Shown piece after piece: positions 3,667-9,586 of a stretch of DNA of 64,000 bases (position 1 is its first letter; every line of letters starts with the position of its first letter). Origin of the DNA: Asterias rubens (lineage: Eukaryota). Made by a program: the position numbers and the translations under genes. Location of the stretch: NCBI RefSeq assembly GCF_902459465.1, contig NC_047072.1:17484001-17548000 (forward strand), given 5' to 3'. The notes under the pieces were generated by a model, which saw nothing but the letters and a program-made list of their open reading frames with translations, searched no databases and was not told where the DNA came from.

Positions 3667-4315
3667 ATTACTCATAATAATTAATGTCATATAACCTTAC
3701 TTGGTAACGAGTAATGGGGAGAGATTGAAAGTACAAAACATTGTGATCATTGGCTCACTCTGAAGTGACGTTGTTTTCGAGGAACATTAATTTTCGACGA
3801 ATTTGATTTCGAGACCTCAGATTTAGATTTTGAGGTCTCGAAATCAAGCATCCGAAAGCACACAACTTTGTGTGACAAGGTTTTTTTTTTCTTTCATTGT
3901 TATCTCGCAACTTCGACGATCAATTGAGCTCAAATTTTCACATGTTTGTTTTTGTCTGCAAATGTTGAGATACACCAAATGAGAAGAGTGGTCTTTGACA
4001 ATTACCAATAGTGTCCAGTGTCTTTAATATTGTCATATTGTTTTTCTTTCACGTGACAAAAACGGAATATCTGACTTCTCGTTGGAGGGAACAAATAGGT
4101 TGGAATAAGAAGAAGAAAAAACGAGAAAAGAGGGGGGAAAAATGTTCGAATGTTACAACCACATTTACATTAAGCATTTTAGTAAAAAGTATAGAAAAGA
4201 AAAATAGCATAAGCCAGTTTATACCCTGTATAAATATCGGTTATATTATAAATGTAATTATTGCATGAACCTCTTCCAGGACTGTCTAATTGTCGTTGTT
4301 CCTCTTAAGATGTGT

Positions 4316-5296
4316 TTAATATTCCTCTCCTTCGTCCTCTCCCTCGTCATCGACAGAGTCGATTCCGACCTCCTCGTAGTCCTTCTCCAGGGCAGCCAGA
4401 TCCTCACGAGCCTCAGAGAACTCACCCTCCTCCATACCCTCCCCTACGTACCAGTGGACGAAGGCACGCTTGGCGTACATCAGATCAAACTTGTGATCCA
4501 GACGAGCCCAAGCTTCGGCGATGGCGGTGGTGTTGCTCAGCATGCAGACGGCACGTTGCACCTTGGCCAGATCACCACCAGGCACCACTGTAGGTGGCTG
4601 GTAGTTGATGCCCACCTTGAAGCCAGTTGGACACCAGTCAACGAACTGGATGGTACGCATGGTCTTGATGGATGCGATGGCAGCGTTGACATCCTTGGGG
4701 ACGACATCACCACGGTACAGGAGGCAGCAAGCCATGTACTTGCCGTGACGGGGATCACACTTCACCATCTGGTTTGCAGGCAAGAAACAGCCTTTGGTGA
4801 GCGAAGCAACGGTCTGCTGTTCATGGTAGGCCTTCTCAGCAGAGATGACAGGTGCGTAGGTGGCAAGAGGAAAGTGAATACGTGGGTAGGGCACCAAGTT
4901 GGTCTGGAATTCTGTCAGGTCGACGTTGAGGGCACCATCAAAGCGAAGTGAAGCAGTGACGGAGGACACGATCTGACCAATGAGACGGTTAAGGTTAGTG
5001 TAGGTCGGTCTCTCGATGTCAAGGTTACGATGGCAGATGTCGTAGATCGCCTCGTTGTCGACCATGAAGGCACAGTCGGAGTGCTCAAGGGTGGTGTGAG
5101 TGGTCAGCACTGAGTTATAAGGCTCTACTACAGCTGTGGAGATCTGTGGGGCGGGGTAGATGGCAAACTCCAGCTTGGACTTCTTGCCGTAGTCGACGGC
5201 CAGACGCTCCATCAACAGAGATGTGAAGCCAGAGCCGGTACCACCACCGAAGCTGTGAAATATGAGGAAACCCTGAAGACCGGTGCACTGGTCAGC
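4316..5296 (-). CDS. tuba: Alpha-tubulin terminal exon (residues 126-451), orphan copy 'A'; candidate alternative last exon or partial duplicate
   Basis: Open 327-codon frame [23 protein letters not shown]...[19 protein letters not shown]. Phase-0 acceptor ...GGTCTTAACAG|GCT at 5297-5298. No tubulin exons 1-3 found between 5297 and 7700. Confidence 0.9.
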
Positions 5297-5921
5297 CTGT
5301 TAAGACCAAAATAGATACAAAGTAGACCATATTAATATCCAGTGTTGTAAACTAAAATTTCCTCAAAGCTTAGTCTTTTCGAAACCACGACTTGGGCTGA
5401 GGCTTCGGCTAAGGCCCCGTCAGATAAGTACACTTTAAAAAGTTCGACGGTGCCTGAAAGGCTCTAGACACCTTTGGTAAATTGTCAAAGACCAGTACTC
5501 CCACTTGGTATATCCCAACAAATGCATAAAATAACATATCTGAGTTTGATCTCAATTGGTCATCGAAGTTGCAAAAGAATCATAACAGAAAAAACCACCC
5601 TTGTCGCACATGTTGTGTGCTTTCAGATGCCTGATTTCGGGACCTCAAAATCAAATTCTATGGTCTCGAAATCAAATTCAAAAATTTTAGTGAGAAATTA
5701 CTTCTTTCTCAAAAACTACGTTACTTCAGAGGGAGTCGTTTCTTACAATGGTTTGTACTATCAACAGCTATTACAAAGTAATATTTGTATGTCAATAATA
5801 TTTTGAGTATACCAATAGTGTTCAGTGCCTTTAATGCATGTTTCTTTACGGACTTGCGAGGTACAGTTTCACTTTTTAGACATTTTTTGTTTCCTTATTA
5901 GACATTTTTGCCAATAATAAT

Positions 5922-6149
5922 GGGTGCATTCAAATAGCTTCCCTGGGTCGACCCCGCGGTGCTCACTCGGGTGAGCCCCTCACAAGAGCTAAACGAACGA
6001 TCATTTGCCCTTTCGTAGTGACGTCATGCACCCCGGGCCAGCCCCTTGACCCGTTCCACAAGCAGGGCACTTGGGGCTGACCCGGGTGAGCCCCTGGAAT
6101 GTAACGTGGCAGACCGGGGTCGACCCGGGGAAGCTAATCGAAAGCACCC
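5922..6149. mobile_element. GC-rich palindromic MITE (GGGTGC...GCACCC); inverted second copy at 28667-28919
   Basis: TIR GGGTGC(A/G)TTC..TTAGCTTCCCTGGGTC; shared internal sequence. Confidence 0.8.
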
Positions 6150-7924: not shown

Positions 7925-8160
7925 CCGTCGAATTGTTGCTGTTGTTGTTGTTTGCTGTTGTATTTTGTTGTTGTTTGTTGTTGTTGTTGTTTGTTTTTTT
8001 GGTGTTTGTTTCTTGCTGCTTGTTGTTTGTTGTTTGTTGTTTGTTGTTTGTGGATTGTTGTTTTTGTTTTTTGTTTGTTGTTTGTTGTTGTTGCTGTTGC
8101 TGCTCTTGCTGCTGTTGTTGTTATTGATGTTGTTGTTTTTGTTGTTGTTGTTGCTTGATT
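7925..8160. repeat. Imperfect (TTG)n microsatellite, reading (CAA)n in the tubA-B 3'UTR
   Basis: About 235 nt of TTG/TTTG/CTG units starting 40 nt after the stop codon. Confidence 0.95.
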
Positions 8161-8199
8161 TCAAGGCTGTTTTGTTCGGTTAGATTCGGCTGTTGACTT

Positions 8200-9183
8200 T
8201 TAGTATTCGTCCTCTCCATCTCCCTCTGCCCCTTCTTCAGCAGAGTCGATTCCAACCTCTTCGTAGTCCTTCTCCAGGGCAGCCAGATCCTCACGAGCCT
8301 CAGAGAACTCACCCTCCTCCATACCCTCTCCTACGTACCAGTGGACGAAGGCACGCTTGGCGTACATCAGATCAAACTTGTGATCCAGACGAGCCCAGGC
8401 CTCAGCGATGGCGGTGGTGTTGCTTAGCATGCAGACGGCACGCTGCACCTTGGCCAGATCACCACCGGGTACCACGGTAGGAGGCTGGTAGTTGATGCCC
8501 ACCTTGAAGCCAGTTGGACACCAGTCGACGAACTGGATGGTACGCTTGGTCTTGATGGTTGCGATGGCAGAGTTGACATCTTTAGGGACGACATCACCAC
8601 GGTATAGGAGGCAGCAGGCCATGTACTTGCCGTGACGGGGATCGCACTTCACCATCTGGTTGGCGGGCTCGAAGCAGGCAGTTGTGATCTCTGCTATACT
8701 CAGCTGCTCATGGTAGGCCTTCTCAGCAGAGATGACTGGGGCGTAGGTGGCAAGAGGAAAGTGAATACGTGGGTAGGGCACCAAGTTGGTCTGGAACTCT
8801 GTCAAGTCAACGTTGAGAGCACCGTCAAAGCGAAGTGAAGCAGTGACGGAGGACACGATCTGACCAATAAGACGGTTGAGGTTGGTGTAGGTCGGTCTCT
8901 CGATGTCGAGGTTGCGACGACAGATGTCGTAGATGGCCTCGTTGTCGACCATGAAGGCACAGTCGGAATGCTCAAGGGTGGTGTGAGTGGTGAGGATAGA
9001 GTTGTAAGGCTCTACTACAGCTGTGGAGATCTGTGGAGCAGGGTAGATGGCAAACTCCAGCTTGGACTTCTTGCCGTAGTCAACAGCCAGACGCTCCATC
9101 AACAGAGATGTGAAGCCAGAGCCGGTACCACCACCGAAGCTGTGGAAGATGAGGAAACCCTGAAGACCGGTGCACTGGTCAGC
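8200..9183 (-). CDS. tuba: Alpha-tubulin tubA-B exon 4 (residues 126-452)
   Basis: ORF 8200..9102 extends to acceptor ...TCTTAATAG|GCTGACCAG. GGGTGSG motif and E254 present; tail [15 protein letters not shown]. Confidence 0.97.
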
Positions 9184-9586
9184 CTATTAAGACCAAATAG
9201 ATACAAAGTACGCCAGATTAACATACAGTGTTGTACACTTTCACATTAATCTTTCCTCAAAGCTCAGCGGTTTCGATTCCAGGGATGACCTTAATACGCA
9301 AATGACGTCATTTGAAAAGGGTGCCCTCTGCTAGAGGTCAAAGGACGCGTACACGACGTGCGTTTTCCATTATTTCGTCATACTTTCTCAATTAAGATGG
9401 CGCCGTGATGATGTCAACCTTTTGCGAATGAGGTGCATGCTGGTCTAGCTAGCGATCAAACCTGATCGCTAGGTAGAACAGCACGCACCTCATTCCACTC
9501 ATAACGCGCGCGTACCGAGTATTTTCGGTGAGGTCAATGCATAAGTTCCATAACCTTAATTCTACAGAGTTTAAAACCAAACTTAC

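What the first reader, a model, noticed from the sequence alone, without database searches (positions are those of the whole stretch)
4030..9265. Orphan duplicated terminal exon: candidate alternative-last-exon switch for alpha-tubulin
Block ~4030-5370 duplicates ~7690-9265. It contains ~75 nt of intron 3 with TTAAT branch-like motif, polypyrimidine tract and AG, the whole exon 4, and ~280 nt of homologous 3' sequence, but no exons 1-3 and no gap intervenes. The ORF and phase-0 acceptor remain intact despite clear divergence. Splicing the tubA-B exon 3 donor (9586) to 5296 instead of 9183 would give a 451-aa tubulin with the same N-terminal 125 aa but a different core, tail (EGEEY vs GEDEY) and 3'UTR. 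Tubulin isotypes normally come from separate genes, so an exon-switch mechanism would be unusual.
Basis: partly seen in the sequence, partly recalled or inferred. Interest (0 to 1): 0.85.

Follow-up and report, generated by a model that had tools for sequence, protein, structure and literature searches.

The report
Orphan alpha-tubulin last exon copy
A stand-alone, still readable copy of the last exon of an alpha-tubulin gene sits 3 kb behind its complete sister gene. It evolved like working coding sequence for almost all of its history. Whether it is a recently beheaded gene or a second, alternative ending of the sister gene cannot be settled without RNA data.

Summary
On the minus strand, 5395-4030 (about 100 nt of intron 3 with its AG acceptor, all of exon 4 at 5296-4316, and 286 nt of 3' flank) duplicates the matching part of the complete alpha-tubulin gene B (exon 4 at 9183-8200). 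There are no exon 2/3 remnants and no N run between the two copies.

New results:
- The duplication is old (dS 0.28), so it is not a haplotype artefact.
- The A lineage shows strong purifying selection. omega is 0.09-0.11, or 0.03 outside one patch. omega=1 is rejected at p<1e-8, and omega does not differ from sister gene B (p=0.15).
- A fragment that was non-functional from the moment of duplication is therefore excluded.
- Copy A nevertheless carries seven residues unseen in 155 alpha-tubulins: R214H (a human TUBA1A disease allele), L286Q, E290S, N293K, A294G, E297L and K338M. Five of them lie in a 14-codon patch.

My best reading (about 0.5) is a paralog that lost exons 1-3 recently and is now a relic.

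The protein databases could not decide. They show only one representative per 90%-identity cluster, and gene B, used as positive control, was also invisible. The scan's other notes on this window and genome touch the same patch and family. None settles the question.

The parts
4316..5296 (-). Copy A: orphan alpha-tubulin exon 4, 326 codons plus TAA (residues 126-451 in TUBA1A numbering), tail ...[10 protein letters not shown]
   Evidence: Translation; ORF list; Pfam Tubulin_C 1.3e-50 and Tubulin 1.8e-24; 95.9% aa identity to B's exon 4
5297..5395 (-). Remnant of the 3' end of intron 3: TTAAT branch-like motif, pyrimidine tract, AG acceptor. Homology to B's intron 3 stops at about 5395.
   Evidence: Pairwise alignment with 9184-9290; sequence
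4030..4315 (-). 3' flank homologous to B's 3'UTR (74-81% identity with several indels). An ATTAAA at 4028 is formed at the junction with the repeat element.
4775..4816 (-). Hyperdivergent patch, exon-4 codons 161-174 (residues 286-299): 18 of 42 nt differ from B; [12 protein letters not shown] in A against [12 protein letters not shown] in B
   Evidence: Codon table; clustering permutation p=0.0004; unique in the window; no match in the metagenome scans
5396..7690 (.). Spacer between B's 3' flank and copy A. It holds repeat copies at 5451-5845, 5916-6150, 6244-6384 and 7217-7551. There is no tubulin exon 1-3 remnant and no N.
3667..4027 (.). Copy of an abundant repeat of about 360 nt (terminus TTAAAGGCAGTGGACACTATTGG...) abutting A's 3' flank. 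It is inverted relative to the copy at 5451-5845.
8200..9183 (-). Gene B exon 4 (327 codons plus TAA), the sister of copy A
9184..9586 (-). Gene B intron 3 (403 nt), containing a palindromic MITE-like insert at 9426-9535
9587..9735 (-). Gene B exon 3. It ends on a full codon (…RKL) followed by GTAAGT, and is the only donor that could serve copy A in cis.
10428..10650 (-). Gene B exon 2 ([12 protein letters not shown]…)

Best explanation
Copy A is what remains of a paralog of alpha-tubulin gene B. The two lineages separated long ago (dS about 0.28). For nearly all of that time A's exon 4 was translated as part of a working alpha-tubulin and was kept under purifying selection about as strong as on B. 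This part is shown.

The inferred part is as follows. A was then a complete tandem gene, and a recent deletion or rearrangement between B's 3' flank and A's intron 3 removed its promoter, exons 1-3 and most of intron 3. The breakpoint lies about 100 nt upstream of exon 4. That left a transcriptionally orphaned exon that has not yet had time to collect stops or frameshifts.

The cluster of radical changes in residues 286-297, together with R214H and K338M, would be either the mark of a diverging isotype or the first damage. One possible source of damage is a short conversion tract from a decayed tubulin copy elsewhere in the genome. On this reading the exon now does nothing.
For: - No exon 2/3 signature or remnant lies anywhere between A and B, and there is no gap there. 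No non-repeat homology links the spacer to B's upstream region.
- Non-function since the duplication is excluded. omega_A=1 is rejected with 2dlnL 33.8-48, p 6e-9 to 4e-12. With strict polarisation the A lineage has 18 synonymous against 9 non-synonymous codon changes, where about 60 non-synonymous would be neutral. There are no indels in 942 core coding nt, while the 104 aligned intron nt hold 3 indels and the 286-nt 3' flank holds several.
- Synonymous change is equal in the A and B lineages (18 vs 17). Flank identity (74-87%) matches synonymous-site divergence. The coding region is therefore not younger than its flanks, which argues against rescue by conversion from B.
- A carries residues absent from 155 database alpha-tubulins: R214H, L286Q, E290S, N293K, A294G, E297L and K338M. 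S290 and L297 are also absent from 80 diverse metagenomic alpha-tubulin loci. R214H is a dominant human TUBA1A disease allele, and I188 and L286 are disease positions (PMC5648057).
- Within the patch, A-lineage changes run about 10 non-synonymous to 3 synonymous nt. That is the neutral ratio, which suits imported or unselected sequence.
- By the working criteria of a large tubulin survey, a tubulin locus is a pseudogene if it misses considerable parts of a normal tubulin, or if its frame is intact but it carries substitutions unlikely for the subtype. Copy A fits both (PMC4202323).
- Earlier unchecked notes of this scan report other tubulin rearrangement products in the same genome.
Against: - No statistically significant relaxation is seen. 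omega_A is 0.095 against omega_B 0.033 (p=0.15), and 0.033 against 0.014 without the patch. The truncation would therefore have to be very recent, roughly the last 5-10% of the lineage or less.
- Twelve to thirteen changes within 42 nt cannot come from uniform decay in so short a time. They need either one complex event or long-term divergence under selection.
- The complete gene D varies in the same patch, which suggests isotype tuning rather than damage.
- The acceptor, the branch-like motif, the phase and the canonical EEY end are all intact.
- Nothing positively shows that A ever had exons 1-3 of its own.
Confidence: 0.5

Rival explanations
1. Alternative last exon. A tandem duplication of the segment from about 100 nt before exon 4 to the end of the transcript gave gene B two terminal exons. 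Transcripts that read through B's poly(A) region splice the exon-3 donor (9587|9586) to the acceptor at 5296. The product is a 451-aa alpha-tubulin with B's first 125 residues and a different M-loop/H9 surface, tail and 3'UTR. Selection on that isoform has kept the exon intact.
For: - Same strand, a phase-0 junction, and an acceptor, pyrimidine tract and TTAAT motif nearly identical to B's.
- An intact 326-codon ORF ending in canonical EEY.
- Purifying selection over the whole A lineage, indistinguishable from B.
- No exons 1-3 of A's own and no trace that they ever existed.
- The spacer is largely repeat insertions, so the two copies may once have been adjacent.
- The substitution cluster lies in a patch that a complete paralog (D) also varies.
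- Duplicated alternatively spliced exons do exist in a tubulin gene, betaTub97EF (PMC4202323).
Against: - B's exon 4 has an equally good acceptor only 403 nt from the donor and is followed by its own 3' end, so it should win almost always. Nothing in the sequence weakens it.
- No long-range pairing between intron 3 and the region upstream of A exceeds shuffled controls.
- A has substitutions at positions nearly invariant in alpha-tubulins, one of them a human disease allele.
- A's counterpart of B's AGTAAA reads AAGAAA, and the only ATTAAA is supplied by a repeat insertion.
- No terminal-exon switch in a tubulin turned up in one literature search and one tubulin-family survey.
- No transcript evidence could be obtained.
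Confidence: 0.22
2. A was non-functional from the start, and its reading frame is kept looking healthy by repeated gene conversion from functional alpha-tubulin genes elsewhere in the genome. A's apparent purifying selection would then be borrowed from the donors.
For: That would mean conversion is active in the family. The patch at 4775-4816 looks like a short imported tract, with a neutral N:S ratio and mostly transversions.
Against: - Within the window A is not close to any possible donor. dS is 0.28 to B, 0.46 to C and 0.58 to D.
- A-specific and B-specific sites alternate along the exon without tracts.
- The flanks are no more diverged than synonymous sites.
- A donor closer to A than B would have to exist elsewhere, and the rest of the genome could not be read here.
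Confidence: 0.12
3. Assembly error: a real complete gene A exists, but its exons 1-3 were dropped or misplaced in the assembly.
For: The region is rich in repeats and the window holds one N run (10766-11031). Tandem tubulin paralogs are hard to assemble.
Against: - There is no gap between A and B.
- A and B differ by 9% in the exon and more in the flanks, so they are neither collapsed nor allelic copies.
- The sequence just upstream of A's breakpoint is unique.
- A simple collapse between similar exon 1-3 regions would remove B's exon 4 rather than produce this layout (inference).
Confidence: 0.06
4. The exon is expressed by another route, for example from its own promoter or first exon in the spacer, or as an exonised part of an unrelated transcript. 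That would give an N-terminally truncated tubulin-like product or a non-coding RNA.
For: The constraint on the ORF needs some explanation. The spacer holds 2.3 kb of unassigned sequence.
Against: The spacer ORFs have no Pfam match. A product lacking residues 1-125 would lack most of the nucleotide-binding domain and is unlikely to fold as a tubulin (general knowledge of the tubulin fold). Constraint at alpha-tubulin level across the entire exon fits a full-length tubulin better.
Confidence: 0.05

Closest known systems
Truncated or partial tubulin pseudogenes with an intact remaining frame, as annotated in the tubulin family survey of Findeisen et al. 2014 (PMC4202323)
   Same: It misses a considerable part of a normal tubulin (residues 1-125). 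The remaining frame is uninterrupted but carries substitutions at otherwise invariant positions.
   Different: The A lineage shows omega about 0.1 over dS 0.165 with no detectable relaxed phase. It keeps intron sequence and a usable acceptor directly downstream of a complete sister gene on the same strand.
Mutually exclusive duplicated exons of dipteran betaTub97EF (Hatje and Kollmar 2013, as cited in PMC4202323)
   Same: A tubulin exon duplicated in tandem within one transcription unit, with frame and splice sites kept, and with the copies differing in a central structural part of the protein.
   Different: Those are internal exons, conserved across Diptera and supported by transcripts. Here the copy is a terminal exon with its own 3' flank, it lies behind the sister exon's poly(A) region, and it has no transcript or cross-species support.
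Alternative last exons of the calcitonin/CGRP type (general knowledge)
   Same: One upstream donor would choose between two terminal exons, each with its own 3' end.
   Different: In known cases the proximal exon has weak signals or is regulated, and the two exons are usually unrelated in sequence. Here the two acceptors are nearly identical and nothing suggests regulation.

Membership tests
alpha-tubulin coding sequence | Matches the Tubulin GTPase-domain C-terminal part and the Tubulin_C domain; high identity to alpha-tubulins | tested here: met
   Pfam PF03953 1.3e-50 and PF00091 1.8e-24; 92-96% identity to animal alpha-tubulins
alpha-tubulin coding sequence | Complete gene with exons encoding residues 1-125 | tested here: not met
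   No exon 2/3 motif or tblastn remnant in 5297-7700
Alternative last exon made by tandem exon duplication | Duplicate on the same strand downstream of a compatible donor, with acceptor, phase and ORF preserved | tested here: met
Alternative last exon made by tandem exon duplication | Purifying selection on the duplicate | tested here: met
   omega_A 0.09-0.11; omega=1 rejected at p<1e-8; not different from B
Alternative last exon made by tandem exon duplication | Transcripts containing the exon 3-copy A junction | not testable with these tools
   No RNA data for this genome. Protein searches show only one representative per 90%-identity cluster, and control gene B was also invisible. Exact ORF look-ups found nothing for A, B, C or D.
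Alternative last exon made by tandem exon duplication | Conservation of the arrangement in related species | not testable with these tools
   The species is unknown and the collections hold no related genome. Metagenome scans found no A-like patch.
Alternative last exon made by tandem exon duplication | Own functional poly(A) signal, and a proximal exon that can be bypassed | tested here: inconclusive
   A has only an ATTAAA created at a repeat junction. B's acceptor is as strong as A's.
Pseudogene fragment | Missing a considerable part of the normal gene | tested here: met
Pseudogene fragment | Stops or frameshifts | tested here: not met
   Uninterrupted 326 codons; the only indel against B is one in-frame codon in the tail
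Pseudogene fragment | Neutral evolution (dN/dS about 1) | tested here: not met
   This excludes long-standing non-function but not a recent loss.
Pseudogene fragment | Substitutions at positions invariant in the subtype | tested here: met
   Seven residues with 0 of 155 occurrences; S290 and L297 absent from 80 metagenomic loci; R214H is a human disease allele

The most novel reading that the evidence does not exclude
Gene B has two alternative terminal exons made by tandem duplication. A single alpha-tubulin gene would then produce two isotypes that share residues 1-125 but differ in the M-loop/H9 surface, the C-terminal tail and the 3'UTR. This would be a terminal-exon counterpart of the dipteran beta-tubulin mutually exclusive exons.
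Probability: 0.2. Interest if true: 0.7.

Novelty: new member of a known kind. Interest (0 to 1): 0.4.

Why it matters
Tubulin isotypes are thought to arise from separate genes. If a last-exon switch were real, it would be a new way to diversify the tubulin code within one transcription unit, and it would be easy to test by RT-PCR. If the exon is a relic, it is an unusually clean snapshot of a tubulin paralog caught just after losing its front half. It is also a caution for annotation: an intact frame and low dN/dS do not show present function. Either way, automatic pipelines may wrongly attach this exon to gene B or call it a partial gene.

Tried and rejected
1. Protein database searches with A's exon 4, with its patch region, and with B's exon 4 as positive control. 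The best identities were 96-97% for both. The database lists only one representative per 90%-identity cluster, so neither A-containing isoforms nor B itself can be seen. The negative result is uninformative.
2. Exact look-up of ATG- and TTG-started ORFs of A, B, C and D. None is in the collection.
3. Exact look-up of the spliced B protein or of a B(1-125)+A protein. Not done: a spliced protein has no reference, and long sequences are not to be typed.
4. Metagenome scans for the A-specific patch as DNA and as peptide patterns. They returned only canonical alpha-tubulins.
5. Long-range RNA pairing between intron 3 and the region upstream of A. It was weaker than the shuffled controls.
6. Homology of the spacer, or of A's downstream flank, to B's upstream or downstream regions. 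Only repeat copies matched.
7. Haplotype or false-duplication artefact. Rejected because dS is 0.28 and the flanks are 74-87% identical.
8. 5'-truncated retrocopy of an unspliced pre-mRNA, or capture between the two inverted repeat copies. Considered because the homology ends near B's AGTAAA and repeats flank A. Rejected because such copies start without function, which the selection test excludes, and because this repeat occurs about every 2.5 kb in the window.
9. Compensated frameshift as the cause of the patch. Rejected: the nucleotides align in phase.
10. The search of earlier findings by sequence and by words. Blank.
11. Rfam and tRNA scans. Nothing in the region.
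Full report
**What is there**

The window carries three complete alpha-tubulin genes on the minus strand, each with the exon layout ATG / exon 2 / exon 3 / large exon 4. Six-frame motif scans and tblastn place the exon 4 copies as follows:
- 31852-30869, called gene C here
- 24124-23138, a divergent gene called D here
- 9183-8200, gene B
- a fourth copy at 5296-4316, copy A

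Exon 2 and exon 3 signatures occur only three times, next to B, C and D. Gene B is exon 2 at 10650-10428, exon 3 at 9735-9587, intron 3 at 9586-9184, and exon 4 at 9183-8200.

Copy A aligns with B from about 5395 to 4030:
- about 100 nt of intron 3, with the same TTAAT motif, pyrimidine tract and AG
- the whole exon, at 90.8% nucleotide identity
- 286 nt of 3' flank at 74-81% identity

Between A and B lie 2.3 kb that contain several repeat copies. There is no tubulin remnant (tblastn E >= 0.28) and no N. The only N run is 10766-11031, upstream of B's exon 2.

**Age and selection**

Pairwise Nei-Gojobori estimates give dS(A,B)=0.28 and dN=0.023 in the core (codons 1-312). The tree is ((A,B),C),D. 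This divergence, together with the indel-rich flanks, rules out an allelic or false duplication.

I wrote a small codon-model likelihood for the four sequences. It gives omega for the A branch of 0.11 (all codons), 0.09 (core) and 0.03 (core without codons 161-174). Fixing omega_A=1 costs 2dlnL = 33.8, 38.2 and 48.0 (p = 6e-9 to 4e-12).

Giving A and B separate ratios yields 0.095 against 0.033 (p=0.15), and 0.033 against 0.014 without the patch (p=0.47).

With strict polarisation by C and D, the A lineage has 18 synonymous and 9 non-synonymous codon changes. The B lineage has 17 and 2 (Fisher p=0.09). GC3 is the same in all four copies.

The coding core has no indel. The 104 aligned intron nt have three, and the 3' flank has several.

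Conclusion, shown: copy A was not non-functional from the moment of duplication. It was maintained as coding sequence for nearly all of the time since it split from B.

**What is odd about A**

Substitutions in A against B, in TUBA1A numbering, with the number of 155 database alpha-tubulins carrying A's residue:

| Change | Alpha-tubulins with A's residue |
|---|---|
| I188V | 9 |
| R214H | 0 |
| L286Q | 0 |
| S287T | 51 |
| E290S | 0 |
| I291L | 3 |
| N/T293K | 0 |
| A294G | 0 |
| E297L | 0 |
| T334S | 8 |
| K338M | 0 |

- In 80 alpha-tubulin loci from metagenomes, position 290 is E (once D) and position 297 is E or D.
- R214H is listed as a dominant human TUBA1A tubulinopathy allele. I188L and L286F hit two other positions changed in A (PMC5648057).
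- Non-synonymous changes cluster. Five of the nine A-lineage non-synonymous codon changes polarised fall within 12 codons (permutation p=0.0004). With I291L and N/T293K, eight residues differ from B in that stretch.
- At nucleotide level, 18 of 42 positions differ from B at 4775-4816. About 12-13 of these are on the A lineage, mostly transversions, with roughly 10 non-synonymous to 3 synonymous.
- The complete divergent gene D also differs in this patch: HDVPELTY against LSVAEITN.
- The patch sequence occurs nowhere else in the window.

**Interpretation**

Two readings fit the selection result.

*Reading (i): a recently truncated gene.* A was a complete tandem paralog and recently lost everything upstream of the last 100 nt of intron 3.

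The sequence cannot separate them, because both predict an intact acceptor, phase, ORF and low omega. I favour (i), at about 0.5, for four reasons:
- Gene fragments are common products of turnover in tandem families. Unchecked earlier notes report other tubulin rearrangement products in this genome.
- B's own exon 4 has an equally good acceptor 403 nt from the donor, against 4.3 kb for A, and is followed by its own 3' end. Nothing in the sequence suggests how it would be skipped, and no docking-type pairing is seen.
- Several of A's residues are unprecedented at near-invariant positions, one being a known disease allele.
- By the criteria used in the largest tubulin survey, such loci are called pseudogenes (PMC4202323).

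Against (i), there is no measurable relaxed phase, so the truncation must be very recent. The patch also cannot be uniform decay. It needs either one complex event, such as a short conversion tract from a decayed copy, or long-term divergence of a tolerant surface that D also varies.

Reading (ii) keeps about 0.2. A tubulin precedent for duplicated alternatively spliced exons exists (betaTub97EF, PMC4202323), though those exons are internal.

Minor rivals:
- Conversion-maintained fragment, 0.12. There is no close donor in the window, no tracts are visible, and the flanks are as old as the synonymous sites.
- Assembly error, 0.06.
- Expression by another route, 0.05.

**What could not be done**

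- No RNA data and no second genome of this organism are reachable.
- Three protein searches were uninformative. Only one representative per 90%-identity cluster is listed, and B, the positive control, was not visible either.
- Exact look-ups of genomic ORFs found nothing.
- Spliced proteins have no reference, so they were not looked up.
- Metagenome scans found no A-like patch.
- The organism was not identified.

**Verdict**

This is a real and well-delimited orphan exon 4 with a clear signature of past, possibly present, coding constraint. It is most likely a freshly truncated alpha-tubulin paralog. The alternative-last-exon reading is possible and cheap to test. Interest is moderate: the ordinary explanation is the more likely one. 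Two things remain unexplained: strong constraint in an exon with no upstream exons of its own, and a tight cluster of radical substitutions.

Noticed in passing
window 3667-4027, 5451-5845, 9813-10101, 14295-15085 and about 20 more: A very abundant repeat of about 360-390 nt. Its terminus is TTAAAGGCAGTGGACACTATTGGTAATTGTCAAAGAC and it has an internal palindrome, GATTTCGAGACCTCA…TGAGGTCTCGAAATC. It occurs roughly once per 2.5 kb. Two inverted copies flank copy A, and one lies in gene B's intron 2.
   Followed up: partly
window 10766-11031: A 266-nt N run upstream of gene B's exon 2, flanked by 43-nt direct repeats (10713-10755 and 11267-11309, 84% identical). Gene B's exon 1 was not located.
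   Followed up: no
window 7945-8180: A CAA/CAG-rich low-complexity block of about 240 nt inside gene B's 3'UTR, absent from copy A's 3' flank.
   Followed up: no
window 18811-19680 and 7217-7551: A satellite-like array with a period of about 74 nt. A diverged stretch of the same repeat lies in the spacer between B and A.
   Followed up: no
window 23138-26115 (gene D): A complete divergent alpha-tubulin whose tail ends …DADEI instead of EEY. Its patch at residues 286-293 reads HDVPELTY. From memory, the VPELT stretch resembles the beta-tubulin sequence at the equivalent place (not checked).
   Followed up: partly
window 9426-9535 and 27907-28014: A palindromic MITE-like element inside gene B's intron 3, with a second copy upstream of gene D.
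   Followed up: no
window 3522-3669 and 49581-49728: A 148-nt stretch repeated at 98.6% identity, far younger than the other repeats nearby.
   Followed up: no
window 57620-57664 (-): An Rfam histone 3'UTR stem-loop match just at the gathering score (34.3 against 34 bits). A histone gene may lie next to it.
   Followed up: no
window 40895-41737 (-): A 280-aa ATG-started ORF with a Sulfotransfer_5 domain match (8.6e-09), possibly a single-exon sulfotransferase gene.
   Followed up: no
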